This document shows, piece by piece, positions 8,078 through 58,562 of a stretch of 64,000 nt of DNA. The stretch is taken from the NCBI RefSeq assembly GCF_035084215.1, contig NC_090335.1, positions 54,188,001-54,252,000 of the forward strand, read 5' to 3'. Position 1 is the first letter of the stretch, and each line of letters opens with the position of its first letter. Source of the DNA: Heptranchias perlo. Taxonomy: Eukaryota. The notes below the pieces were generated by a model. The model was given only the letters and a program-made list of their open reading frames with translations. It was not told the origin of the DNA and searched no databases. A program made the position numbers and the translations under genes.

Positions 8078-8285
8078 TTTTTTTTTATTCATTCATGGGA
8101 TGTGGACGTCGCTGGCAAGGCCAGCATTTATTGCCCATCCCTAATTGCCCTTGAGAAGGTGGTGGTGAGCCACCTTCTTGAACCGCTGCAGTCCGTGTGG
8201 TGAAGTTTCTCCCACAGTGATGTTAGGTTGGGAGTTCCAGGATTTTGACCCAGCGACGATGAAGGAATGGCGATATATTTCCAAG
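8078..8285 (-). mobile_element. 3'-terminal fragment of the tRNA-headed LINE family
   Basis: Reverse complement closely matches 55920-56126 (FIVAGSKSWNS...HHHLLKGN* plus gggcaattagggatgggcaataaatgctgg tail and poly-A). Confidence 0.9.
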
Positions 8286-12324: not shown

Positions 12325-15038
12325 GGTGACCAAGGTTGGGAACTAAATATTCCAGGGTACTTGACGTTTCGAAAAGACAGACAAAATGGAAAAGGAGTGG
12401 GAGTGTAGCCCTGATAATAAAGGATGGTAGTTAGAAAGGATCTTGGCTCGGAAGATCAGGACGTAGAATCAGTATGGGTAGAGATAAGAAATAACAAGGG
12501 GCAGAAAACACTGGTGGGAGTAGTTTATAGGCCCCCTAACAGTAGCTATACCGTTGGACAGAGTATTAAGCAAGAAATAATAGGAGCTTATAATAAAGGT
12601 AATGCAATAATCGTGGGGGACTTTAATCTTCATATAGACTGTGCAAACCAAATTGTCAAAGGTACTATGGAAGACGAGTTCATGGAATGCATTTGAGACA
12701 GTTTCCTAGAACAAGACATCATGGAACCAACCAGGGAACAGGTTATTTTCGATATGGTCTTGTCTAATAAGGCAGGGTTAATTAGTAATCTCATAGTAAA
12801 GGATCCTCTGGGGAAGAATGATCATAATATGATAGAATTGCCCATTGAATTTGGGAGTGACATACTTAAGTCCGAAACTAGAGTCTTAAACTTAAATAAA
12901 ACCAATTACATAGGTATGAGGGGCAAGTTGGTTAAGGTAGATTGGGAAATTAGATTAAAAGGTATGACAGTAGGTAAGCAATGGCAAACATTTAAAGAGA
13001 TATTTCAAAATTCTCAACGAATATACATTCCATTGAGAAATAAAACTCCACAGGAAAAATGATCCAACTGTGGCTAACAAAAGTAGTATTAGGTTAAAAG
13101 AAGAGGCTTATAATGTTGCCAAGAAGAGTACTAAGCTTAAGGATTGGGAGAGTTTTAGAAACCAGCAAAGGATGACCAAAAAATTGATAGAAAGGGAGGA
13201 AATAGAATACGAGAGTAAACTAGCAAGAAATATAAAAACAGATTGTAAGAGCTTCTACAAGTATGTAAAAAGGAAGAGAGTAGCGAAAGTAAACATGGGT
13301 GCCTTAGATGCTGATTTAGGAGAAACTAGGAGAAACTGGGGAATAAAGTAATGGCAGAGAGTATAATCAAATATTTTGTATCAACCTTCACGGTAGAAGA
13401 CACAAAAAACATACCAGAAATAATGGGGAACCAAGGGACTAATGAGAGTGAGGAACTTAAAGTAATTAATATTAGTAAAGAAAAGGTACTAGAGAAATTA
13501 ATGAGACTAAAAGCCTGTTGGCCTACATCCTACGGTTCTAAAAGAGATGGCTGCAGAGATAGTGGATGCATTGGTTGTGATCTTCTGAAATTCCCTACAT
13601 TCTAGAACAGTCCCAGTGCATTGGAAGGTAGCAAATGTGACCCCGCTATTCAAGAAAGGAGGGAGAGAGAAAACAGGGAACTACAGGCCTGTTTGTCTGA
13701 CATCAGTCTTTGGGAAAATGCTGCAATCCATTATTAAGGAAGTGGTAACAGGGCACTTAGATAACCATAATATGAATAGGCAGAGTCTCATGGTTTTATG
13801 AAAGGGGAACCATGTTTGATAAATCTATTAGAGTTTTTTGAGGATGTGACTAGCAGGGTAGATAAGGGGGAACCAGTGGATGTAGTATATTTGGATTTTC
13901 AAAAGGCATTTGATAAGGTGCCACATAAAAAGTTGTTACATAAGATAAGGGCTCATGGGGTTGGGGGTAATATATTATCATGGATAGAAGCTTGGTTAAG
14001 GGACAGAAAACAGAGAGTAGGTATAAATGGGTCATTTTCAGGTTGGCAGATTGTAACTAGCGGGGTGCTGCACGGGTTGGTGCTTTGGCCTCAGCTATTT
14101 ACAATTTATATTAATGACTTAGGTGAAGGGACCGAGTGTAATGTATCCAAGTTTGCTGACGATACAAAGCTAGGTGGGAAAGTAAACAGTGAGGTGGAGT
14201 CAAAGAGTCTGCAAAGGGATATACACAGGTTAAGTGAGTGGGCAAGAAGGTGGCAGATGAAGTATAATGTGGGGAAATGTGAGGTTATTCACTTTGGTAG
14301 GAAGAATAGAAAAACAGAATATTTTTTAAATGGTAAGAAACTATTAAATGTGGTGTTCAGAGAGAATTGGGTGTCCTCATACACGAAACACAAAAGGTTA
14401 ACATGCAGGTACGGCAAGCAATTAGGAAGGCAAATGGCCTGTTGGCCTTTATTGCAAGGGGGTTGGAGTACAAGAGTAAGGAAGCCTTGCTATAAGTTGT
14501 ACAGGGCTTTGGTGAGACTACACCTGGAGTAGTGTGTACAGCTTTGGTCTCCTTATCTAAGGAAGGATATACTTGTCTTAGAGATGGTGCAACGAAGGTT
14601 CACTAGATTGATTCCTGGGATGAGAGGGTTGTCCTATGAGGAGAGATTGAGTAGAATGGGCCTATACTCTCTGTAGTTTAGAAGAATGAGAGGTGATCTC
14701 ATTGAAACATATAAGATTCTGACAGGGTAGATGCTGAGAGGATGTTTTCCATGGCTGGAGAGTCTAGAACTAGAGAGTGGGAGGTGAGGAGGAATTTCTT
14801 CACTCAGAGCGTTGTGAATCTTTGGAATTCTCTACCCCAGAGGGCTGTAGATGCTGAGTCATTGAATATGTTCAAGGCTGAGATAACTAGATTTTTGGAC
14901 TCTAGGGGAATCAAGGGATATGGGAATCGGGCCTGAAAGTGGAGTTGAGGTCAAAGATCAGCCATGATCTGATTGAATGGTGGAGCAGGCTCGAGGGGCC
15001 CCTACTCCTGCTTCTATTCATTATGTTCTTATGTTCTT
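12325..15038 (+). mobile_element. Decayed 5'-truncated CR1 LINE (APE plus RT)
   Basis: ORFs 12424-14936: VGVVYRPP, GDFN, DFQKAFD, FADDTK; (ttcttatg)n tail at ~15020-15038. Confidence 0.92.
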
Positions 15039-20136: not shown

Positions 20137-23085
20137 TCATGTCCAATTTCCTGCCCGCTCCCCATAACCCCTAATTCCCTTTACTTCGAGGAAACTGTCT
20201 ATTTCTGTTTTAAATTTATCTAATGATGTAGCTTCCACAGCTTCCTGGGGCAGCATATTCCACAGACCTACCACCCTCTGAGTGAAGAAGTTTCTCCTCA
20301 TCTCAGTTTTGAAAGAGCAGCCCCTTATTCTAAGATTATGCCCCCTAGTTCTAGTTTCACCCATCTTTGGGAACATCCTTACTGCATCCACCCGATCAAG
20401 ACCCCTCACAATCTTATATGTTTCAATAAGATCGCCTCTCATTCTTCTGAACTCCAATGAGTAGAGTCCCAATCTACTCAACCTCTCCTCATATGTGCGC
20501 CCCCTCATCCCCGGGATTAACCGAGTGAACCTTCTTTGTACTGCCTCGAGAGCAAGTATGTCTTTTCTTAAGTATGGAGACCAAAACTGTATGCAGTATT
20601 CCAGGTGCGGTCTCACCAATACCTTATATAACTGCAGCAATACCTCCCTGTTTTTATATTCTATCCCCCTAGCAATAAAAGCCAACATTCCGTTGGCTTT
20701 CTTGATCACCTGCTGCACCTGCATACCAACTTTTTGATTTTCTTGCACTAGGACCCCCAGATCCCTTTGTACTGCAGTACTTTCCAGTCTCTCGCCATTA
20801 AGAAAATAACTTGCTCTCTGATTTTTCCTGCCAAAGTGCATAACCTCACATTTTCCAATATTATATTGCATCTGCCAAATCTCCGCCCACTCACCCAGCC
20901 TGTCTATATCCCCTTGCAGGTTTTTTATGTCCTCCTCACTCTCTACTTTCCCTCCCATCTTTGTATCATCTGCAAATTTTGATATGTTGCACTCGGTCCC
21001 CTCCTCCAAATCGTTAATATAGATTGTAAAGAGTTGGGGACCCAGCACCGACCCCTGTGGAACACCACTGGTTACTGGTTGCCAGTCCGAAAATGAACCA
21101 TTTATCCCAACTCTCTGCTTCCTGTTTGATAACCAATCCTCCACCCATGCCAGAATATTACCCCCAATCCCGTGATTTTTTATCTTAAGTAATAATCTTT
21201 CATGTGGCACCTTGTCGAACGCCTTCTGGAAGTCTAAATACACCACGTCCACTGGTTCCCCTTTATCCACCCTATACGTTATATCCTCGAAGAACTCAAG
21301 CAAATTTGTCAGACATGACTTCCCCTTCATGAAGCCATGCTGACTTTGTCCTATTAAATTATGCTTATCTAAATGTTCCGTTACTGTCTCCTTAATAATA
21401 GACTCCAAAATTTTACCCACCACAGATGTTAAGCTAACTGGCCTATAATTTCCAGCCTTCTGCCTACTACCCTTTTTAAACAACGGTGTTACATTAGCAG
21501 TTTTCCAATCAGCCGGGACCTCTCCTGAGTCCAGGGAATTTTGGAAAACTATCACCAAAGCATCCACAATCCCCACTGCCACTTCCCTCAAGACCCTAGG
21601 ATGGAAGCCATCAGGTCCAGGGGATTTATCCGCCTTGAGTCCCATTATTTTACTGAGTACCATCTCCTGAGTGATTTTAATCGTATTTAGCTCCTCCCCC
21701 CCGAGAGTCCCCTGTTTGTCCAGTGTTGGGATATTCTTAGTGTCCTCTACTGTAAAGACTGAAACAAAATATTTGTTCAGCATTTTTGCCATCTCCATGT
21801 TTCCCACCATTAATTTCCCGGTCTCATCCTCTAAGGGACCTATGTTTGCCTTAGCCACCCTTTTTCTTTTTATATAACTATAGAAACTCTTGCTATCTGT
21901 TTTTATATTTTTTGCTAATTTCTTTTCATAATCTAACTTCCCTTTCTTAATCAATCCTTTAGTTACTTTTTGCTGTCTTTTGAAGAATTCCCAATCTTCT
22001 ATCCTCCCACTAAGTTTGGCTACCTTATATGTCCTTGTTTTTAGTCGGATACTATCCTTGATTTCTTTACTTAGCCACGGGTGGCTGTCATTTCTTTTAC
22101 ACCCTTTTTTCCTCAGTGGAATATATTTATTTTGAAAGTTGTAAAATAACTCCCTAAATGAACACCACTGCTCATGTACCGTCTTACCCTTTAATCTATT
22201 TTCCCAGTCCACTTTAATCAATTCCGCTCTCATACCATCATAGTCTCCTTTATTCAAGCTCAGTACGCTTGTTTGAGAATCAACCTTCTCACCCTCTAAT
22301 TGGATATGGAATTCAACCATGTTGTGGTCGCTCGTTCCAAGGGGATCCTTAACTAGGACATTATTAATTAATCCTGACTCATTACACAGGACCAGGTCCA
22401 AGGTTGCCTGCCCCCTTGTAGGATCAGTTACATACTGCTCAAGAAATCCATCCCTGATGCACTCAATGAACTCGTCCTCAAGGCTGCTCTGCCCAATTTG
22501 ATTTGTCCAGTTAATATGATAATTAAAATCCCCCATAATTATGGCTGTTCCCTTATTACATGCCCCGACTATCTCCTGATTAATACTTCTTCCAGCAGAG
22601 TTGCAACTATTAGGAGGCCTATATACTACGCCCACTAATGTTTTTTTTCCCTTATTATTCCTTATCTCCACCCAAACTGTTTCATTATCTTGATGCTTTG
22701 TCCCAATATCATTTCTCTGTATTACAGTGATTCCTTCCTTTATTAACATAGCCACCCCACCTCCCCTTCCTTCCTGCCTGTCCTTCCTGATTGTTAAATA
22801 CCCTGGCATATTTAATTCCCAGTCGTTGTCACCCTGCAGCCATGTTTCTGTAATGGCCACAAGATCATACCCATACGTAGTTATTTGTGCCGTTAACTCG
22901 TCCATTTTATTACGAATGCTACGTGCATTCAGATAAAGAACTTTCAAATCTGTTTTGTGACGCTTAGTTCCTGCTTTTTCCTTTTTTAACACTTTACCTA
23001 TTACTCCATACCTTCTGTCCCTTCCTGTTACGCTTTCCTCTCTCTCCCTGCTCAGGTTCCCAACCCCCTGCCACTTTAGTTTAAA
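20137..23085 (-). CDS. CR1 ORF2: APE endonuclease plus reverse transcriptase (open frame extends to the slippery site at 23085)
   Basis: 951-aa ORF 20137..22992 (GTG start) plus 31 stop-free upstream codons; LYLNARS, ITETW, YRPP, GDFN, SDH; DFQKAFD, GVPQGSVLGP, FADD. Confidence 0.95.
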   Translation of the reverse strand, partial: FKLKWQGVGNLSREREESVTGRDRRYGVIGKVLKKEKAGTKRHKTDLKVLYLNARSIRNKMDELTAQITTYGYDLVAITETWLQGDNDWELNMPGYLTIRKDRQEGRGGGVAMLIKEGITVIQRNDIGTKHQDNETVWVEIRNNKGKKTLVGVVYRPPNSCNSAGRSINQEIVGACNKGTAIIMGDFNYHINWTNQIGQSSLEDEFIECIRDGFLEQYVTDPTRGQATLDLVLCNESGLINNVLVKDPLGTSDHNMVEFHIQLEGEKVDSQTSVLSLNKGDYDGMRAELIKVDWENRLKGKTVHEQWCSFRELFYNFQNKYIPLRKKGCKRNDSHPWLSKEIKDSIRLKTRTYKVAKLSGRIEDWEFFKRQQKVTKGLIKKGKLDYEKKLAKNIKTDSKSFYSYIKRKRVAKANIGPLEDETGKLMVGNMEMAKMLNKYFVSVFTVEDTKNIPTLDKQGTLGGEELNTIKITQEMVLSKIMGLKADKSPGPDGFHPRVLREVAVGIVDALVIVFQNSLDSGEVPADWKTANVTPLFKKGSRQKAGNYRPVSLTSVVGKILESIIKETVTEHLDKHNLIGQSQHGFMKGKSCLTNLLEFFEDITYRVDKGEPVDVVYLDFQKAFDKVPHERLLLKIKNHGIGGNILAWVEDWLSNRKQRVGINGSFSDWQPVTSGVPQGSVLGPQLFTIYINDLEEGTECNISKFADDTKMGGKVESEEDIKNLQGDIDRLGEWAEIWQMQYNIGKCEVMHFGRKNQRASYFLNGERLESTAVQRDLGVLVQENQKVGMQVQQVIKKANGMLAFIARGIEYKNREVLLQLYKVLVRPHLEYCIQFWSPYLRKDILALEAVQRRFTRLIPGMRGRTYEERLSRLGLYSLEFRRMRGDLIETYKIVRGLDRVDAVRMFPKMGETRTRGHNLRIRGCSFKTEMRRNFFTQRVVGLWNMLPQEAVEATSLDKFKTEIDSFLEVKGIRGYGERAGNWT

Positions 23086-24026
23086 CCCTCCCCAACAGCA
23101 CTAGCAAACACTCCTCCTAGGACAGCGGTCCCGGCCCTGCCCAGGTGCAGACCGTCCGGTTTGTACTGGTCCCACCTCCCCCAGAACCGTTTCCAGTGTC
23201 CCAGGAATTTGAATCCCTCCCCCTTGCACCATTCCTCTAGCCACGTATTCATTTGAAATATCCTCCTATTTCTACTCTGACTAGCACGTGGCACTGGCAG
23301 CAATCCTGAGATTACTACCTTTGAGGTCCTATTTTTTAATTTACCTCCTAACTCCCTATATTCTGCTTTTAGGACCTCATCCCCTTTTTTACCTATATCG
23401 TTGGTGCCTATGTGCACCACGACAGCTGGCTGTTCGCCCTCCCCCTCCAAAATGTTCTGTAGCCGCTCCGAGACATCCTTGATCCTTGCACCAGGGAGGC
23501 AACACACCATCCTGGAGTCTCGGTTGCGGCCGCAGAAACGCCTGTCTATTCCCCTTACAATTGAGTCCCCTATCACTATAGCTCTGCCACTCTTTTTCCT
23601 CCCAGCCTGTGCAGCAGAGCTACCCGTGGTGCCAGGAAGTTGGCTGCTGCTGCCTTCCCCTGATAAGTCATCCCCCCCAACAGCATCCAAAGTGGCATAT
23701 CTGTTTGAGAGGGGGATGGCCACAGGGGACCCCTGCACTACCTGCCTGCATCTCTTACTCTTCCTGGTGGTCACCCATTCACTTCCTGCCTGTATACCCT
23801 TTACCTGCGGTGTGACCAACTCGCTAAACGTGCTATCCACGAGTTTCTCTGCATCGCGGATGCTCCACAGTGAGTCCACCCGCAGCTCCAGCTCCGAGAT
23901 ACGATCGGTCAGTAGCTGCAGGTGGACACACTTCCCGCACACATGGTCGGCAGGGACACTGGTAGTGTCCATGACTTCCCACATCTTGCAGGAGGAGCAT
24001 ATCACGGGTGCGAGGTCTGCTGCCAT
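23076..24026 (-). CDS. CR1 ORF1: zinc finger/leucine zipper plus SGNH esterase-like domain
   Basis: CSSC...CGKC finger, heptad leucines, IGDSIVRG, HIGTND and DGLHL motifs; 316 aa, intact. Confidence 0.93.
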   Translation of the reverse strand: MAADLAPVICSSCKMWEVMDTTSVPADHVCGKCVHLQLLTDRISELELRVDSLWSIRDAEKLVDSTFSELVTPQVKGIQAGSEWVTTRKSKRCRQVVQGSPVAIPLSNRYATLDAVGGDDLSGEGSSSQLPGTTGSSAAQAGRKKSGRAIVIGDSIVRGIDRRFCGRNRDSRMVCCLPGARIKDVSERLQNILEGEGEQPAVVVHIGTNDIGKKGDEVLKAEYRELGGKLKNRTSKVVISGLLPVPRASQSRNRRIFQMNTWLEEWCKGEGFKFLGHWKRFWGRWDQYKPDGLHLGRAGTAVLGGVFASAVGEGLN

Positions 24027-32545: not shown

Positions 32546-34117
32546 GATCCATGTCCCCTCATTCTAGAGCCATCAATCAATGGAAACAGTCTGTTTCTAT
32601 CTACCCTGTCCCACCCCTTCATCATTTTAAACAGCTCTGAAGTATTTGTATCTCATTCTACCTTGACACTGGCACACCCAAGGAAGATCAGGCACCTGAG
32701 AGTTCAGTTTAGCCCAGCAGGTTGTATAACCAGGATACTAGAAGGCTGCCCCCATGGTATAGCGTACAGGGATACAAATCCTGCTCCTGTAATTCCTGGT
32801 GTATCCCAACAGCGCATATTAAAAAATTGTGTAATCCCAGCCCACAATTTTCTGTCCATCTGAAAAGTTTACCCCATAGAGACAATATTAAAATATTCTA
32901 GTTTCTCTGTACTTCTTTTGACACATGAGCAATTTGAAGTACATTTTACAGAAACCAGTTTTCCTGGTTGAACAGGATTTTTCATTTTTGTTTTCTGACT
33001 ATCTACATTCCTGGATTTAAGGTGGAGATTTTAAAGGTTTCGTTTTTTTCAGGTCACACACTCAAGCAATATGAGTTAACACTGAAGTAGGATCTAAGTT
33101 GGATATTTGGGGGTACAAGTTAACTGATAACCTGAAGTACCCTGAACTGGACCATGCAAATAATAACGATAATAAGCAAATATTTCAAAGTGGTAAATGT
33201 GGCCTGATTTATCTCAGTTTGATATTGGCATGTCCTTATATATAAAAAAAAAGCTCCACTGGGCATGCTTGTTGGCATTTTCTCGGTTGTAACTTGAGAT
33301 TGCCTGCTGCCATGACAAACAAACCACAATAAAAGTTGGCTTATAAGGGTGAATTTTGCACGGCTCTGCCGCTGGTGTGAAGCCTCACTCAACAGGATCA
33401 TTGATCGGAGAATTTGGTGAGGAGGTCAACAGTCCATATTCCAAGTGCTCCCAATTTTCCAGTGATTAGTTTTAATCATTCAAAAATTAGGGGCATCACA
33501 AATCAGCTCCATGCCTGATTCTCCAATCCGCATTCCGGGAGTGCAGCCTTTTAAAATTGACCTTGTAGTTTCTAGTGACCAATCTCCATGGGGCGGGGGG
33601 GGGGGTGGTTAGTGGGTTTCATTCAGTCAAATTCACTCCAAGGTTACACAGTATGAAATTACAACCAAGTCAATCACTTGGTAATCTGATATCTGATCTG
33701 TAGTATTCTAGGACACTGTTATTGCTTGCCTAGCCAGCAGGACATGGAGGGATTAGACCTATCACTAAGGGCTGGGATTCCTCCCACTCAGTTCCAGCTA
33801 ATTCTACAAGACAATGCCCTAATGGGTAAGTGACCCCAGTTTAACAAGCAATGAAAAGCTTACCAGTGCTCTGTCCTGGTTAACTGCACAGTATCCAGTC
33901 ACAATGAGGGGGGTCCCTAACTTATGGATTTTGCCAACCTGCTCCTAGGCTTTCCAGATTTAGGTAAGTGAGGTGTCCCTACATGGAGAGGGTCTGCTCT
34001 CCATATCAGCCTAATGGAATCTCTGCTTACATGGATTTCTCAAGTATGGTGATGGGTTTCGGCACATCAGACAGTTGGCTGACCAAACAATTTTAAAAAA
34101 CGTATCTACTGTGATTT

Positions 34118-34926
34118 GGGCTTATAAGTGGCAAGTAACATTCGCGCCAGATAAGTGCCAGGCAATGACCATCTCCAACAAGAGAGAGTCTAACCAACTC
34201 CCCTTCACATTCAACGGCATTACCATCGCCGAATCCCCCACCATCAACATCATGGGGGACACCATTGACCAGAAACTTAACTGGACCAGCCATATAAATA
34301 CCGTGGCTACGAGAGCAGGTCAGAGGCTGGGTATTCTGCGGCGAGTGACTCACCTCCTGACTCCCCAAAGCCTTTCCACCATCTACAAGGCACAAGTCAG
34401 GAGTGAGATGGAATACTCTCCACTTGCTTGGATGAGTGCAGCTCCAACAACACTCAAGAAGCTCGACACCATCCAAGATAAAGCAGCCCGCTTAATTGGC
34501 ACCCCATCCACCATCCTAAACATTCACTCCCTTCACCACCGGTGCACTGTGGCTGCAGTGTGTACCATCCACAGGATGCACTGCAGCAACTCACCAAGGC
34601 TTCTTCGACAGCACCTCCCAAACCCGCGACCTCTACCATCTAGAAGGACAAGATCAACAGGCACATGGGAACAACACCACCTGCACGTTCCCCTCCAAGT
34701 CACACACCATCCCGACTTGGAAATGTATCGCCGTTCCTTCATTGTCGCTGGGTCAAAATCCTGGAACTCCCTTCCTAACAGCACTGTGGGAGAACCGTCA
34801 CCACACGGACTGCAGCGGTTCAAGAAGGCGGCTCACCACCACCTTCTCGAGGGCAATTAGGGATGGGCAATAAATGCTGGCCTCGCCAGCGACGCCCACA
34901 TCCCATGAACGAATAATAGAAAAAAA
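34118..34926 (+). mobile_element. 5'-truncated copy of the tRNA-headed LINE family
   Basis: ORF 34075..34860 nearly identical to the C-terminal part of 54999..56063; same 3' tail and A-rich end. Confidence 0.92.
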
Positions 34927-51749: not shown

Positions 51750-52851
51750 CCCCCCCCGATCTCTTGCGATCAGCCCATTCCTTTGCTGATTCACTACTAC
51801 AGTAAGGAAGGGATCCACAGAATAACTTTTACAAGGGTACCCCAAACCTGGCCCAATTCTTCCCTAAACCTACTCAGAGGGTAGTAGTTTACTTTTACTG
51901 CTATTACCAGGTGGAAAATGGAGTTCCCAGCAACAGTAGTGTACCAGTTCAAGTTACAGCTGACCTGAAAATCATATCCCAAATTCCAGTTTTGCAGACA
52001 ACATGCTGCGGTCAGTTTTATTGGGCCTAAAGCAGCCAGACCAGTGGTTGTTAAAGGAGCTGCTGGAGGCTGCCACAAAAAGGTGAGTAAAAGAAAATGT
52101 ACTTTCCAGTATTTCCATATTGAAACTGCGGGCTGCTGCCGGTCACCGCTCGCTCACCTCTCGATCTCCTGCCCCCCGACCCACCGTGAGCCCGACGTCC
52201 CAGCCACCCAACTTTCATACTCTTCAGGATTGGTGCACTGCCTCCTGGGGCATAGCTGGTGCACCCAGCCGACTGGTCACATCCTGATGATGCAAGAGGA
52301 CCTCTTGCACATCAATTTCAGCAGTCCCCTAAGTCCAGCTCAATATATCTTCACTGTATGTGAGCAAAGTTCAAACGTATTGTTGGCTTCTTAAGAAGTA
52401 TAAAATGCTTGGTCGTTCATCTCTGGAGCCTAGGTTAAAATCCAGCTCAGACCAGACAGCTTGGAGAGTGTACTTGATAACAAGATAAGTGCAATAAAAC
52501 TCTACTGAACTGAATGCCCAACTTAAGGATAGTATTAGATCCAAAGAGGAGTCATATAAAGTTGCCAGAAAAAGTAGCAAGCCTGAGGATTGCGGGCAGT
52601 TTAGAATTCAGCAAAAAATGACCAAGAGATTGATAAAGAGGGGAAAAATAGAGTATGAGAGTAAACTTGCAAGGAACATAAAAGTGGACTGTAAAAGCTT
52701 CTACAAGAATGTAAAAAGAAAAAGATTAGTGAATACAAATGTAGGTCCCTTACAGTCAGAAACGGGAGAATTTATAATGGGGAACATGGAAATGGCAGAG
52801 CAATTAAACAAATACTTTGGTTCTGTCTTCACAGAAAAGGACACAAATAAC

Positions 52852-55800
52852 GGTAGCATAGTGGTTATGTTACTGGGCTAGTAATCCAGAGGCCTGGACT
52901 AAAATCCAGAGTCATGAGTTCAAATCCTGCTACGGCAGCTGGTGAATTTAAATTCAATTAATTAAAAATTAAAATCTGGAATTAAAATACTAGTATCAGT
53001 AATGATGGCCATGAAACTACCGGATTGTCGTAAAAACCCATCTGGTTCACTAATGCCCTTTAGGGAAGGAAACCTGCCACCCTTACCCGGTCTGGCCTAT
53101 ATGTGACTCCAGACACACAGCAATGTGGCTGATTCTTAATTGCCCTCTGAAATGGCCCAGCAAGCCACTCAGTTGTAAAATCGCACTACGAAAAGTCATA
53201 ATAAGAATAAAACCGGATGGACCACGAGGCACTGGACACGACAACGGCAAAACATCAAGCCCAGTCGACCCTGCAAGGTCCTCCTTACTAACATCTGGGG
53301 ACTTGTGCCAAAATTGGGAGAGCTGTCCCACAGATGAGTCAAGCAACAGCCTGACATAGCCATACTCACAGAATCATACCTTTCAGCCAACTTCCCAGAC
53401 TCTTCCATCACCATCCCTGGGTATGTCCTGTCCCACCCACAGGACAGACCCACCAGAGGTGGCGGTACAGTGATATACAGTCAGGAGGGAGTGGCCCTGG
53501 GAGTCCTCAACATTGACTCTGGACCCCATGAAATCTCATGGCATCAGGTCAAACGTGGGCACGGAAATCTCCTGCTGATTACCACCTACCGTCCTCCCTC
53601 AGCTGATGAATCAGTCCTCCTCCATGTTGAGCACCACTTGGAGGAAGCACTGAGGGCAGCAAGGAGCACAGAATGGACTCTGGGTGGGGGACTTCAATGT
53701 CCATCACCAAGAGTGGCTCGGTAGCACCACTACTGGCCGAGTCCTGAAGGACATAGCTGCCAGATTGGGCCTGCGGCAGGTGGTGAGCGAACCAACACGA
53801 GGGAAAAACTTACTTGAAACTCGTCCTCACCAATCTACCTGTCGCAGATGCATCTGTCCATGACAGTATTGGTAGGAGTGACCACCGCACAGTCCTCGTG
53901 GAGATGAGGTCCCGTCTTCACACTGAGGACACCATCCAACGTGTTGTGTGGCACTACCACCGTGCTAAATGGGATAGATTCAGAATGGATCGAGCAGCTC
54001 AAAACTGGGCATCTATGAGGCGCTGTGGGCCATCAGCAGCAGCAGAATTGTATTCCAGCACAAATCTGTAACCTCATGGCCCGGCATATTCCTCACTCTA
54101 CCATTACCAACAAACCAGGGGATCAACCATGGTTCAATGAGGAGTGTAGAAGAGCATGCCAGGAGCAGCACCAGGCGTACCTAAAAATGAGGTGCCAACC
54201 TGGTGAAGCTACAACTCAGGACTACATGCATGCTAAACAGCGGAAGCAACATGCTATAGACAGAGCTAAGCGATTCCGCAACCAATGGATCAGATCAAAG
54301 CTCTTGCAGTCCTGCCACATCCAGTCGTGAATGGTGGTGGACAATTAAACAACTAACGGGAGGAGGAGGCTTCAGCAAACATCCCCATTCTCAATGATGG
54401 CGGAGTCCAGCACGTGAGTGCAAAAGACAAGGCTGAAGCGTTTTGCAGCCAGAAGTGCCGAGTGGATGATCCATCTCAGCCTCCTCCCGATATCCCCACC
54501 ATCACGGAAGCCAGTCTTCAGCCAATTCGATTCACTCCACGTGATATCAAGAAACGGCTGAGTGCACTGGATACAGCAAAGGCTATGGGCCCCGACAACA
54601 TCCCAGCTGTAGTGCTGAAGACTTGTGCTCCAGAACTAGCTGCGCCTCTAGCCAAGCTGTTCCAGCACAGCTACAACACTGGCATCCACCCGACAATGTG
54701 GAAAATTGCCCAGGTATGTCCTGTCCACAAAAAGCAGGACAAATCCAATCCGGCCAATTACCGTCCCATCAGTCTACTCTCAATCATCAGCAAAGTGATG
54801 GAAGGTGTCGTCGACAGTGCTATCAAGCTGGCACTTACTGACCAATAACCTGCTCACCGATGCTCAGTTTGGGTTCCGCCAGGACCACTCGGCTCCAGAC
54901 CTCATTACAGCCTTGGTCCAAACATGGACAAAAGAGCTGAATTCCAGAGGTGAGCTGAGAGTGACTGCCCTTGACATCAAGGCAGCATTTGACCGAGTGT
55001 GGCACCAAGGAGCCCTAGTAAAATTGGAATCAGGGGGAAAACTCTCCAGTGGCTGGAGTCGTACCTAGCACAAAGGAAGATGGTAGTGGTTGTTGGAGGC
55101 CAATCATCTCAGCCCCAGGGCATTGCTGCAGGAGTTCCTCAGGGCAGTGTCCTAGGCCCAACCATCTTCAGCTGCTTCATCAATGACCTTCCCTCCATCA
55201 TAAGGTCAGAAATGGGGATGTTCGCTGATGACTGCACAGTGTTCAGTTCCATTCAAAACCCCTCAGATAATGAAGCAGTCCAAGCCCGCATGCAGCAAGA
55301 CCTGGACAACATCCAAGCTTGGGCTCATAAGTGGCAAGTAACATTTGCGCCAGATAAGTGCCAGGCAATGACCATCTCCAACAAGAGAGAGTCTAACCAC
55401 CTCCCCTTGACATTCAACAGCATTACCATCGCCGAATCCCCCACCATTAACATCCTGGGGGTCACCATTGACCAGAAACTTAACTGGACCAGCCATATAA
55501 ATACTGTGGCTACGAGAGCAGGTCAGAGGCTGGGTATTCTGTGGCGAGTGACTCACCTCCTGACTCCCCAAAGCCTTTCCACCATCTACAAGGCACAAGT
55601 CAGGAGTGTGATGGAATACTCTCCACTTGCCTGGATGAGTGCAGCTCCAACAACACTCAAGAAGCTCAACACCATCCAAGATAAAGCAGCCCGCTTGATT
55701 GGCACCCCATCCACCACCCTAAACATTCACTCCCTTCACCACCGGCGCACTGTGGCTGCAGCGTGCACCATCCACAGGATGCACTGCAGCAACTCGCCAA

Positions 55801-56126
55801 GGCTTCTTCGACAGCACTTCCCAAACCCGCGACCTCTACCACCTAGAAGGACAAGAGCAGCAGGCGCATGGGAACAACACCACCTGCACGTTCCCCTCCA
55901 AGTCACACACCATCCCGATTTGGAAATATATCGCCGTTCCTTCATTGTCGCTGGGTCAAAATCCTGGAACTCCCTTCCTAACAGCACTGTGGGAGAACCG
56001 TCACCACACGGACTGCAGCGGTTCAAGAAGGCGGCTCACCACCACCTTCTCGAGGGCAATTAGGGATGGGCAATAAATGCTGGCCTCGCCAGCGACGCCC
56101 ACATCCCGTGAACGAATAAAAAAAAA
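52852..56126 (+). mobile_element. tRNA/SINE-headed, ORF1-less LINE (CR1/L2-group APE-RT); this copy is mutated
   Basis: A box TAGCATAGTGG 52854-52864, B box GAGTTCAAATCC 52916-52927; APE and RT motifs; 3' tail with AATAAA and poly-A. Confidence 0.88.
53152..56063 (+). pseudogene. Single APE-RT ORF of the tRNA-headed LINE, with stops and frameshifts
   Basis: gaaATGG at 53152 is in frame with VLLTNIWGL (53278) past one TAA at 53176; ILTESYL, YRPP, GDFN, SDH; NYRPISLL, DIKAAFD, GVPQGSVLGP, FADD. Confidence 0.8.
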
Positions 56127-57852
56127 CTTCCCAGAAATGCTAACGAACCACGGGTCCAGTGAGAAGGAGGAATTGAAAGAAATTAGTATTATTAAAAAAG
56201 AGTGCTGGAGAAATTAATGGGACTGAAAGCCAACAAATCCCCAGGGCCTGATAATCTGCATCCCAGAGTATTAAAAGAGGTAGCCATGGAAATAGTGGAT
56301 GCATTAGTTGTCACCTTCCAAAATTCTATAGATTATGGAACAGTTTCTGCAGATTGGAGGGTGGCAAATATAACCCCCCTATTTAAAAAAGGAGGGAGAA
56401 AGAAAACAGGGAACTGCAGACCGGTTAGCCTAACATCAGTAGTAGGGAAAATGCTAGAGTCTATTATAAAGGATGTGATAACAGGTCACTTAGAAAATAT
56501 CAACGGGATTAGACAAAGCCAAGATGGATTTATGAAAGGGAAATTGTGTTTGACAAACCTACTGGAGTTTTTTGAGGATGTAACTGGTAGAATAGATAAG
56601 GGAGAACCAGTGGATGAGGTGTTTTTGGATTTTCAGAAGGCCTTTGATAAAGTCCCATGTAAGAGGTTAGTGTGCAAATTAAAGCACATGGGATTGGGGG
56701 TAATATATTGGCATGGATTGAAAATTGGTTAACAGACAGAAAACAGAGAGTGGGAATAAATGGGTCTTTTTTGGAGTGGCAGGCAGTTACTAGTCGGGTA
56801 CAGCAGGGATCAATGCTTGGGCCCCAGCTATTCACAATATATATCAATGATTTGGATGAGAGAACCAAATGTAATATTTCCAAGTTTGCTGACGACACAA
56901 AACTAGGTGGGATCGTGAGTTGTGAGGAGGATGCAAAGAGGCTTGAAGGCAATTTAGACAAGCTGAGTGAGTGGGCAAATACATGGCAGATGAAGTATAA
57001 TGTGGATAAATGTGAAGTTATCCACTTTGGAAGGAAAAACAGAAAGGCAGAGTATTATTTAAATGGTGATAGATTGGGAAATGTTGATGTACAAAGGGAC
57101 CTGGGTGTCCTTGTACACCAGTCACTGAAAGCAAACATGCAGGTGCAGCAAGCAGTTAGGAAGGCAAATAGTATGTTGGCCTTCATTGCAAGAGGATTTG
57201 AGTACAGGAGCAAGGATGTCTTACTGCAGTTATACAGGGCCTTGGTGAGACCACACCTGGAGTATTGTGTGCAGTTTTGGTCTCCTTACCTAAGATAGGA
57301 TATACTTGCCATAGAGGGAGTGCAACGAAGGTTCACCAAACTGATTCCTGGGACAGCAGGACTGTCGTATGAGGAGAGATTGGGTCGACTCGGCCTGTAT
57401 TCACTCGAGTTTAGAAGAATGAGAATCTCATTGAAATGTATAAAATTCTGACAGGGCTAGACAGACTGGATGCAGGGAGAAAGTTTCCCCTGGCTGGGGG
57501 TCCAGAACGAGGGATCACATTCTCAGGATACGGGGTGGGACATTTAGGACTGGGATGAGGAGAAATTTCTTCACTCAGAGGGTGGTGAACCTGTGGAATT
57601 CTCTACCACAGAAGGCTGTGGAGGCCAAGTCACTAAATATATTTAAGAAGGAGCTAGATAGATTTCTAGACATAAAAGGCATCAAGGGGTATGGGGAGAG
57701 AGCAGGAATATGGTATTGAGATAGAGGATCAGCCACGATCTTATTGAATGGCGGAGCAGGCTCAAAGGGCCGAATGGCCTACTCCTGCTCCTATTTTCTA
57801 TGTTTCTATGTTTCTGTACAAATAGAATTTAATGGATTCAGAAGAAACATAA

Positions 57853-58330: not shown

Positions 58331-58562
58331 CTGGCACTGTAGTGAAAAGTTTATGGCACTGAAATAGCAACCCAGTGATCACAAGCTCAAGTCTCACCCG
58401 GGCCAAGTTGTGAAATTGAATTCAGTAAAGTTTGTGAGCTAGCACCAGAAACAGAAATGAACCATGAAGGCTGTCCGATTGTCATAATACCCTAACTGAG
58501 AAACTAGGAATGGGCAATAAATGTGACCTTTCCAGTGTTACCCACATCCCGGGAATAAATGA
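58331..58562 (+). mobile_element. Short decayed SINE sharing head/body and 3' tail with the tRNA-headed LINE
   Basis: Degenerate tRNA head; aattgaattca and accatgaaggctgtccgattgtcataataccc (cf. 53009-53039), then directly taggaatgggcaataaatg...cccacatccc..gaataaa (cf. 56061-56120). Confidence 0.65.

What the first reader, a model, noticed from the sequence alone, without database searches (positions are those of the whole stretch)
52852..56126. tRNA-headed, ORF1-less LINE depleted of TTTT: candidate Pol III-transcribed protein-coding retrotransposon
Seen: (1) The element opens with a tRNA-type internal promoter (A box 52854-52864, B box 52916-52927) and a ~300-nt SINE-like leader. (2) A Kozak-context ATG at 53152 follows, in frame with a complete APE endonuclease and then the RT, leaving no room for ORF1. 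(3) The host CR1 frame is contiguous on either side (DTNN|FPEML), so head and body arrived as one insertion. (4) By eye the 3.3-kb sense strand has only one TTTT (54441-54444) against more than 15 AAAA runs, while the flanking CR1 sense strand has many TTTT runs; the truncated sibling at 34118-34926 has none. Established: Pol III terminates at 4 or more T, SINEs use A/B boxes, LINEs normally use Pol II, and some AAUAAA-bearing SINE Pol III transcripts are polyadenylated (AATAAA at ~56072). Inference: an autonomous LINE that adopted a Pol III promoter and purged its terminators, which would need cap-independent translation from the leader. This copy is mutated, and I cannot check whether the family is already described.
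Basis: partly seen in the sequence, partly recalled or inferred. Interest (0 to 1): 0.92.

Follow-up and report, generated by a model that had tools for sequence, protein, structure and literature searches.

The report
SINE-headed single-ORF LINE in shark
This is a dead copy of a shark-type LINE retrotransposon whose 5' leader is the tRNA-derived head and body of its own partner SINE; other copies share this build, but nothing here shows that RNA polymerase III makes the long RNA.

Summary
The anatomy is real. At 52852-56126 one clean insertion carries a tRNA-type head, about 300 nt of SINE body, one APE+RT reading frame and a tail.

The head and leader (52852-53177) plus the last 74 nt are exactly the abundant partner SINE. 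Contigs of three organisms join 53174/53177 directly to 56053.

The fusion is not a one-off:
- Gene models from another data set start at the same ATG. One begins MAQQATQL, identical to the window, and runs open into the endonuclease.
- Two further gene models carry SINE body in front of the endonuclease.
- The scan's first readers noted three more such LINEs on other DNA of this genome (unchecked).

- This copy is dead, with at least 6 frameshifts.
- The ATG at 53152 meets an in-frame TAA at 53176.
- Lack of ORF1 is normal for its relatives.
- The TTTT scarcity is not significant. One is observed, against 2.4 expected from dinucleotide or synonymous-codon shuffles (P about 0.27).

The polymerase remains untested. 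My odds:
- a self-propagating headed LINE: 0.55-0.6, of which about 0.25 is Pol III and about 0.3 Pol II
- heads re-added by template switching onto SINE RNA: 0.3

The parts
52849..52851 (+). Left copy of the short target duplication (AAC; at most AATAAC, against AAAAAC on the right).
   Evidence: Host CR1 copies at 13340-13460 and 21690-21790 (rc) are colinear across the insertion point.
52852..52935 (+). tRNA-derived head. A box 52854-52864, degenerate B-like motif about 52896-52907, B box 52916-52927. It lacks about 7 nt of the SINE 5' end.
   Evidence: Sequence. Rfam RF00005 at 18.7 bits, below threshold, model positions 8-63. The old SINE 58331-58562 extends further 5'.
52936..53151 (+). 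SINE body, which is the 5' UTR of the LINE. An AT-rich part runs to about 53000 and a conserved part follows.
   Evidence: Joints 53174/53177 to 56053 in contigs of all four runs. P0182 residues 32-69 match 53063-53176 and are followed by the endonuclease. P0004 starts MMSFREGNLPSSPG, which by my reading of the translations corresponds to about 53055-53095.
53152..53178 (+). Probable family start codon plus 7 codons (MAQQATQL), then TAA in this copy. The stretch shared with the SINE ends at 53174/53177.
   Evidence: P0179 starts MAQQATQLY and runs open into the endonuclease. P0002 starts MAEQA and P0003 starts MAETA. Joints.
53179..53274 (+). LINE-specific N-terminal or leader stretch. At 90% likeness it was seen only in organism A.
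   Evidence: Depth at 53183 is about 1M in X1 (103 contigs), 1.5k in X5 and 0 in X6. Frames differ among the gene models.
53275..54050 (+). AP-endonuclease domain, frameshifted (frame 0, then 1, then 2), with a stop at 53335.
   Evidence: tblastn with full-length relatives P0012, P0019, P0026 and others. Weak Pfam Exo_endo_phos_2 hit, 23.2 bits against a cut-off of 27.4.
54372..56063 (+). Reverse transcriptase and CR1-type C-terminal region, frameshifted around 54706-55053. Stop TAG at 56061-56063.
   Evidence: Pfam RVT_1 at 2.8e-18 and 2.2e-7. tblastn. Colinear with residues 608-935 of the window's intact CR1 ORF2, 27% identity, E 2e-31.
54441..54444 (+). The only TTTT on the sense strand. 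It is specific to this copy.
   Evidence: 145 X1 records leave the window sequence at 54443 and read GCAACCATCTTCAGCCAGAAGTGCC instead.
56053..56126 (+). 3' tail shared with the SINE. Hairpin 56063-56107 with inner stem GCTGGC/GCCAGC at 56079-56093. AATAAA at 56072-56077 and 56115-56120. A9 at 56118-56126.
   Evidence: Alignment with two truncated siblings and the old SINE. Fold of -24.1 kcal/mol, z -2.28. Joints.
56125..56127 (+). Right copy of the target duplication (AAC, overlapping the A run).

Best explanation
This is a dead, nearly full-length copy of a real LINE family of the CR1-like supergroup, from a probable elasmobranch. The family has one APE+RT ORF of about 960 codons and a stem-loop tail.

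The family's 5' UTR is the tRNA-derived head and body of its own partner SINE, and the ORF's start codon lies inside the stretch shared with that SINE. LINE and SINE are therefore colinear at both ends: 326 nt at the 5' end and 74 nt at the 3' end. The SINE looks like the LINE with nearly the whole ORF removed.

Inferred history: the LINE's reverse transcriptase once switched from the 5' end of LINE RNA onto an older, shorter SINE RNA. The resulting headed LINE then propagated as a unit. An internal deletion of it gave the present 400-nt SINE.

Inferred working: the RT binds the tail hairpin in cis or on SINE RNA. The full-length RNA must start at or before the head for the head to be inherited.

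Which polymerase makes the full-length RNA is not shown. I put Pol II, acting from or through the leader, slightly ahead of Pol III.
For: SHOWN
- One insertion with clean ends in a CR1.
- SINE-type joints 53174/53177 to 56053 occur in contigs of organisms A, B and C and in the possible RNA run.
- P0179 begins MAQQATQL, identical to 53152-53175, has Y where this copy has TAA, and runs open into the endonuclease: 57% identity over 53152-53415, E 4e-25.
- P0002 and P0003 start at the same ATG.
- P0182 carries SINE body 53063-53176 (63% identity) and then the endonuclease. P0004 starts in SINE body and then continues into the endonuclease.
- In X1, 98% of the depth at 53183 is on contigs that differ from this locus (T for G). 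These reach 35 nt to either side, which is as far as a 31-mer graph can carry them into the SINE body.
- Depth rises from 5' to 3', as for a LINE.
- The RT and C-terminus are colinear with CR1 ORF2.
- Relatives are single-ORF elements of 935-1010 aa, on contigs of mostly 3.3-4.1 kb.

LEADS, UNCHECKED
- Three further first-reader notes of the same build on other DNA of this genome, 3247, 3274 and 3048 letters long.
Against:
- The presence of the tRNA head itself on other LINE copies therefore rests on unchecked notes and on a weak P0182 match (PALDPGELGFN against PATAAGEFKFN, E 0.36).
- The gene models come from one unnamed EukProt data set. They may be spliced predictions on decayed copies.
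- The older, shorter SINE form is seen in one copy only (58331-58562).
- Headed copies could be made anew each time by homology-guided template switching. That would give the same picture.
Confidence: 0.57

Rival explanations
1. By-product. The LINE RNA is an ordinary Pol II transcript that starts inside the shared leader, at or after about 53050. During reverse transcription the RT sometimes jumps, within the 128 nt shared with the SINE (53050-53177), onto abundant SINE RNA and finishes at the SINE's 5' end. Headed copies then recur with one and the same build, and the head does nothing for the LINE.
For: - The one old SINE copy lacks 53050-53177, so that stretch may be the LINE's own 5' UTR. 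This fits the published model of a small-RNA head added by template switch to a bipartite LINE (PMC5786205).
- This copy's head is cut short by about 7 nt.
- Template jumping by LINE reverse transcriptases is established knowledge (from memory).
Against: - Every gene model that reaches upstream of 53178 shows SINE body there (5 of 5).
- No headless 5' end stood out among the loose ends listed, though only the top 24 of about 11,600 were shown.
- Depth over the head in X1 (2.6M) is of the same order as depth over the LINE 5' part (1.7M).
Confidence: 0.3
2. The A and B boxes drive Pol III through the whole 3.3 kb. The family is kept free of T4 terminators. The uncapped RNA is translated from the leader ATG without a cap.
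For: - An internal type-2 promoter at the very 5' end is the simplest way for a retroposon to carry its start site along. It would also explain why SINE and LINE share one 5' end (inference).
- The sole TTTT is specific to this copy. Other copies were noted as TTTT-free (unchecked). The family may therefore have none in 3.3 kb: P(0)=0.058 by codon shuffle and about 0.01 for independent bases.
- LINEs fed by another polymerase exist. R1, R2 and R4 depend on rRNA transcription and on 5' ribozymes (PMC5786205).
Against: - T4 scarcity in this copy is within chance once composition is kept (P 0.26-0.28).
- The feature was picked after the fact.
- To my knowledge no Pol III mRNA of this length is known.
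- The tail has no terminator of its own.
- The possible RNA contigs run on past both ends of the element into unlike sequence. That looks like embedding in other transcripts.
- No direct transcript evidence exists.
Confidence: 0.25
3. A one-off template-switch chimera, a nested insertion (SINE and LINE landing side by side), or an assembly artefact at this locus only.
For: Chimeric retrocopies of small RNA plus LINE are known in mammals and fungi (from memory). The window holds no second headed copy.
Against: - The same junction is read in P0179, P0002 and P0003, and in X1 contigs that differ from this locus.
- No SINE tail follows the LINE's A run, and no host bases are lost.
- A LINE landing inside a SINE would leave the SINE's own tail behind it.
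Confidence: 0.03

Closest known systems
HE1 SINE / HER1 LINE pair of sharks and rays (listed in PMC3747384: V-SINE, tRNA head, partner HER1)
   Same: A tRNA-derived SINE of elasmobranchs that shares its 3' tail with a CR1-like LINE. The host appears to be of the same kind.
   Different: As far as I know, the published link concerns the 3' tail only. Here the SINE's whole 5' part sits on the LINE as well. Identity with HE1/HER1 was not checked by sequence, because none was at hand.
SINEs built from bipartite (5' + 3') non-autonomous LINEs, Kojima 2018 (PMC5786205)
   Same: The SINE body holds the LINE's 5' region and the SINE tail holds the LINE's 3' region. The relationship is one of internal deletion.
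   Different: That survey found such 5' contributions only for the RTE and Vingi clades. This LINE is CR1-like. In the published model the LINE has no small-RNA head, whereas here the autonomous-length element carries it.
RIME/ingi and NARTc/L1Tc of trypanosomes; R2-derived SIDEs
   Same: The short element consists of the two ends of the long one (memory, and PMC5786205 for the Ingi and R2 clades).
   Different: None of these has a tRNA-type Pol III head. They belong to other clades and hosts.
UnaL2/UnaSINE1 and ZfL2-2 (stringent-type, single-ORF fish LINEs)
   Same: One ORF without ORF1. A conserved 3' stem-loop is shared with a tRNA-derived SINE (from memory).
   Different: Only the 3' ends are shared there. 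The 5' UTR of those LINEs is not SINE-derived.
U6/L1-type chimeric retrocopies made by RT template switching
   Same: A small Pol III RNA joined to the 5' side of LINE sequence in one insertion.
   Different: Those are one-off, usually 5'-truncated, dead-on-arrival copies with variable junctions. Here one junction recurs.
R2/R1/R4 LINEs co-transcribed with rRNA
   Same: A precedent for a LINE that does not rely on its own Pol II promoter and is translated without a normal cap (PMC5786205).
   Different: They depend on Pol I read-through plus a self-cleaving ribozyme and on site-specific insertion. No ribozyme or site specificity is seen here.

Membership tests
tRNA-derived SINE head (SINE2 type) | A box (TRGCNNAGTGG) and B box (GGTTCGANNCC) in tRNA-like spacing at the 5' end | tested here: met
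   A box perfect at 52854-52864. B box GAGTTCAAATCC at 52916-52927 has 2 departures. The starts lie 62 nt apart.
tRNA-derived SINE head (SINE2 type) | Recognisable tRNA sequence and structure | tested here: inconclusive
   Rfam tRNA gives 18.7 bits against a gathering score of 29, E 0.3, model positions 8-63. ARAGORN finds none. The fold z-score is -1.34.
Partner SINE of this LINE | A short form exists that joins head and body directly to the LINE tail, in many copies | tested here: met
   Joints 53174/53177 to 56053 in 22, 10, 10 and 2 contigs of X1, X5, X6 and X15. An old copy lies at 58331-58562.
APE-type LINE, CR1-like supergroup | AP endonuclease followed by RT in one frame, and a C-terminal region colinear with CR1 ORF2 | tested here: met
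   RVT_1 at 2.8e-18. tblastn to relatives of 935-1010 aa over 53275-56051. 27% identity to residues 608-935 of the window's CR1 ORF2, E 2e-31. The Pfam endonuclease hit alone is under its cut-off.
APE-type LINE, CR1-like supergroup | Exact clade (CR1, L2 or Rex1/Babar) | not testable with these tools
   No labelled reference sequences.
HE1 SINE / HER1 LINE | Sequence identity with the published HE1 and HER1 and with the V-domain | not testable with these tools
   Only a table entry was found (PMC3747384). No sequence was held.
Pol III transcription unit | Internal type-2 promoter at the 5' end | tested here: met
   See the A and B boxes above. In this copy only 2 nt precede the A box.
Pol III transcription unit | No T4+ terminator before the 3' end, beyond what composition gives | tested here: not met
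   One T4 is observed. Shuffles give a mean of 2.4, P 0.26-0.28. Even zero would have P of only about 0.06-0.09.
Pol III transcription unit | Uncapped, amanitin-resistant transcripts that start at the head | not testable with these tools
   The runs are kept as contigs, which show neither starts nor strand.
One-off template-switch chimera | Junction unique to one locus | tested here: not met
   The junction recurs in P0179, P0002 and P0003 and in variant X1 contigs.

The most novel reading that the evidence does not exclude
The family's full-length, protein-coding RNA is made by RNA polymerase III from the tRNA-type internal promoter in its head. The RNA runs 3.3 kb because the sense strand holds no T4 tract, and it is translated without a cap from the ATG in the SINE-shared leader. 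This would be the first autonomous retrotransposon driven by Pol III. It would also mean that the SINE and its LINE are two length variants of one Pol III transcription unit.
Probability: 0.22. Interest if true: 0.92.

Novelty: new variant of a known kind. Interest (0 to 1): 0.6.

Why it matters
SINEs are thought to be assembled from a small-RNA head plus pieces of a LINE, but the intermediate has not, to my knowledge, been described: a full-length LINE that itself carries the head. The survey I could read found LINE 5' parts in SINE bodies only for the RTE and Vingi clades (PMC5786205). A CR1-like LINE that shares both ends, its start codon and a tRNA head with its SINE would widen that rule. 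It would also give a concrete model of how a SINE is born.

It also makes an old question testable in a defined system: can a Pol III promoter drive an autonomous, protein-coding retrotransposon? If the heads prove to be passive by-products of template switching, the finding is a tidy but ordinary case of RNA recombination.

Tried and rejected
- ARAGORN and Rfam at gathering threshold found nothing in the window.
- A protein search with the open frame that bridges the junction (53054-53356) gave no hit.
- Two scans of metagenome contigs, one with the alignment of the endonuclease N-terminus and one with P0005, found no relative.
- The tail 19-mer gave nothing in viral contigs. It gave one hit in a bacterial MAG, which I take for chance because about 4 such hits are expected in 596 Gb.
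- Cluster look-up gave no names, so the exact LINE clade stays open.
- The protein atlas gave only generic RVT_1 clusters.
- Paper searches for a tRNA-headed or Pol III-driven LINE found nothing, and the first HER1 search was swamped by the receptor of that name. Repbase and Dfam cannot be searched here, so 'not described' is not shown.
- I rejected a LINE landing inside a SINE, because no SINE tail follows the A run.
- I rejected ATG 53217 as the start, because P0179, P0002 and P0003 point to 53152, although the frames upstream of 53275 differ among copies.
Full report
WHAT IS THERE

Window 52852-56126 (+) is a single insertion inside a CR1 element. Two other CR1 copies of the window (13340-13460 and 21690-21790, reverse complement) run colinear across the insertion point. 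No host base is missing. The only duplication is AAC, or at most A(T/A)AAC, partly hidden in the A run.

From 5' to 3' the insert holds the following.
- A tRNA-type head. The A box TAGCATAGTGG is perfect at 52854-52864 and a B box GAGTTCAAATCC lies at 52916-52927.
- About 220 nt of body.
- An ATG at 53152 in good context.
- An AP endonuclease at 53275-54050.
- A reverse transcriptase with a CR1-type C-terminal region at 54372-56063.
- A 74-nt tail with a hairpin, two AATAAA motifs and A9.

The Rfam tRNA model matches 52854-52909 only below threshold, at 18.7 bits against 29, and from model position 8. ARAGORN sees nothing. The old SINE copy at 58331-58562 runs further 5' than this head. Together these say that this copy lacks about 7 nt of the family's 5' end.

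STATE OF THIS COPY

The copy is dead.
- The ATG is followed 8 codons later by an in-frame TAA at 53176-53178.
- There is a TGA at 53335.
- Full-length relatives can only be laid on it by changing frame at least six times.

THE LEADER IS THE PARTNER SINE

I laid contigs of four runs on the stretch: organism A as DNA, organisms B and C, and a possible RNA run of organism A.
- The element is a very abundant repeat, with the 5'-to-3' rise in depth that is typical of LINEs.
- In all four runs, contigs join 53174 or 53177 directly to 56053.
- An abundant short element therefore exists that consists of 52852-53177 plus 56053-56126. This is the tRNA-derived SINE that uses this LINE's tail.
- The SINE keeps the LINE's ATG and its first 7-8 codons, and at the other end the last 3 codons and the 3' UTR.
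- In the form read in organism C, the letters after 53174 run CAAGGGCAATTAGGG. By my reading that join is in frame (MAQQATQFKGN-stop). This has one chance in three of occurring by accident and is only a curiosity.
- One old SINE copy in the window (58331-58562) goes from about 53050 straight to the tail. An older, shorter form may therefore have lacked 53050-53177.

IS THE FUSION A ONE-OFF?

It is not.

First, predicted proteins from another data set (EukProt gene models, organism not named) read across the same junction.
- P0179 begins MAQQATQL, identical to 53152-53175. It has Y where this copy has TAA and runs open into the endonuclease: 57% identity over 53152-53415, E 4e-25.
- P0002 (MAEQA...) and P0003 (MAETA...) start at the same ATG.
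- P0182 carries 38 residues of SINE body (53063-53176, 63% identity) and then the endonuclease.
- P0004 starts MMSFREGNLPSSPG, which by my reading is the body at about 53055-53095, and then continues into the endonuclease.
- All five models that reach upstream of 53178 show SINE sequence there.

Second, the contigs of organism A point the same way. At 53183, 98% of the depth in X1 lies on 103 contigs that differ from this locus (T for G). These contigs reach 35 nt to either side, which is just as far into the SINE body as a graph of 31-letter words can carry them past the SINE/LINE fork.

Third, first readers of this scan noted the same kind of LINE on three other pieces of this genome, 3274, 3247 and 3048 letters long. 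Two of those notes describe the tRNA head. I could not check them.

What remains thin is the tRNA head itself on other copies. Apart from those notes I have only an insignificant match in P0182 (E 0.36).

WHAT KIND OF LINE

- The RT piece has 31,202 relatives at E<=1e-10.
- The full-length relatives I looked up are 935-1010 aa, on contigs of mostly 3.3-4.1 kb. The kin are therefore single-ORF elements, and lack of ORF1 is the rule for them.
- The RT and C-terminus are colinear with residues 608-935 of the window's intact CR1 ORF2: 27% identity, E 2e-31. The element therefore belongs to the CR1-like supergroup and not to RTE.
- The finer clade could not be named.
- A review table lists the HE1 V-SINE of sharks and rays with the partner LINE HER1 (PMC3747384). 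This pair may be that one, but I had no sequence to compare.

THE TTTT ARGUMENT

The counts are right: one T4+ run against 22 A4+ runs. The host CR1 pieces have 6 and 8 T4+ runs.

The sense strand, however, has only 20% T.

| Null model | Expected T4+ runs | P(<=1) | P(0) |
|---|---|---|---|
| Independent bases | 4.4 | not computed | about 0.01 |
| Dinucleotide shuffles | 2.4 | 0.28 | not computed |
| Synonymous-codon shuffles along the true frame path | 2.4 | 0.26 | 0.058 |

The same codon test on the CR1 ORF2 gives 9 observed against 9.3 expected.

The one TTTT (54441) is private to this copy. In X1, 145 records read GCAACCATCTTCAGCC... there instead, so the family may have none. That is compatible with Pol III and mildly favours it. 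It is not evidence of purging, and the feature was chosen after the fact.

HOW IT MOST LIKELY WORKS

Shown:
- the insertion is a single unit;
- the SINE and the LINE share both ends and the start codon;
- the junction recurs.

Inferred:
- an RT template switch from LINE RNA onto an older SINE RNA made a headed LINE;
- that headed LINE propagated;
- an internal deletion of it gave the present SINE;
- the RT recognises the tail hairpin, which both elements carry.

This resembles the published route from bipartite LINEs to SINEs, which had been seen only for RTE and Vingi (PMC5786205). The difference is that here the long element bears the head.

The main rival is that heads are added again and again by homology-guided jumping within the shared 128 nt. 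That would give the same picture without any function for the head.

My odds:
- a self-propagating headed LINE: 0.55-0.6, split roughly into Pol II 0.3 and Pol III 0.25
- a by-product of template switching: 0.3
- a one-off or an artefact: 0.03

LIMITS

No second genomic copy could therefore be read.
- The runs are kept as contigs, which show neither transcript starts nor strand.

Noticed in passing
window 58331-58562 (+): An old, short copy of the partner SINE. It has the head, the body to about the equivalent of 53050, and then the LINE tail directly. It lacks the 53050-53177 stretch and extends about 6-8 nt further 5' than the LINE's head.
   Followed up: partly
window 34116-34923 (+) and 8078-8284 (-): Two 5'-truncated copies of the same LINE, 96.4% and 93.7% identical to this one. 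They end in GAATAAT-AGAAAA... and GAATAAA+A9. The A runs of similar length suggest a templated tail rather than a variable poly(A) tail.
   Followed up: partly
window 20137-22992 (-) and 23076-24026 (-): An intact-looking CR1 with a 951-aa ORF2 and a 316-aa ORF1 upstream. I used it as a control: its T4+ count is 9 against 9.3 expected.
   Followed up: partly
window 52896-52927: The head holds two B-box-like motifs 18 nt apart (GGACTAAAATCC and GAGTTCAAATCC), as if part of the T-arm had been duplicated. The Rfam alignment uses the first.
   Followed up: no
P0009 (EukProt gene model), residues about 85-168: Downstream of a LINE N-terminus this model runs into a tandem 8-residue repeat (RGLDSWPQ/RGLDSRPQ). 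The repeat resembles the frame-0 reading of the head at 52888-52911 (RGLD*NPE). It may be a tandem array grown from a piece of the SINE head, or it may be chance.
   Followed up: no
window 53178-53260 compared with runs X5 and X6: The LINE-specific stretch just after the junction has next to no depth in organisms B and C at 90% likeness, whereas 53360 onward has over a million. The first 100 nt or so after the start codon seem to turn over fast between species, or to be replaced.
   Followed up: no
L001 6880-6898 (Omnitrophica MAG MHHD01000014.1): A single exact match of the 19-nt tail motif in a bacterial genome bin. About 4 such matches are expected by chance in that collection, so I took it for chance.
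   Followed up: no
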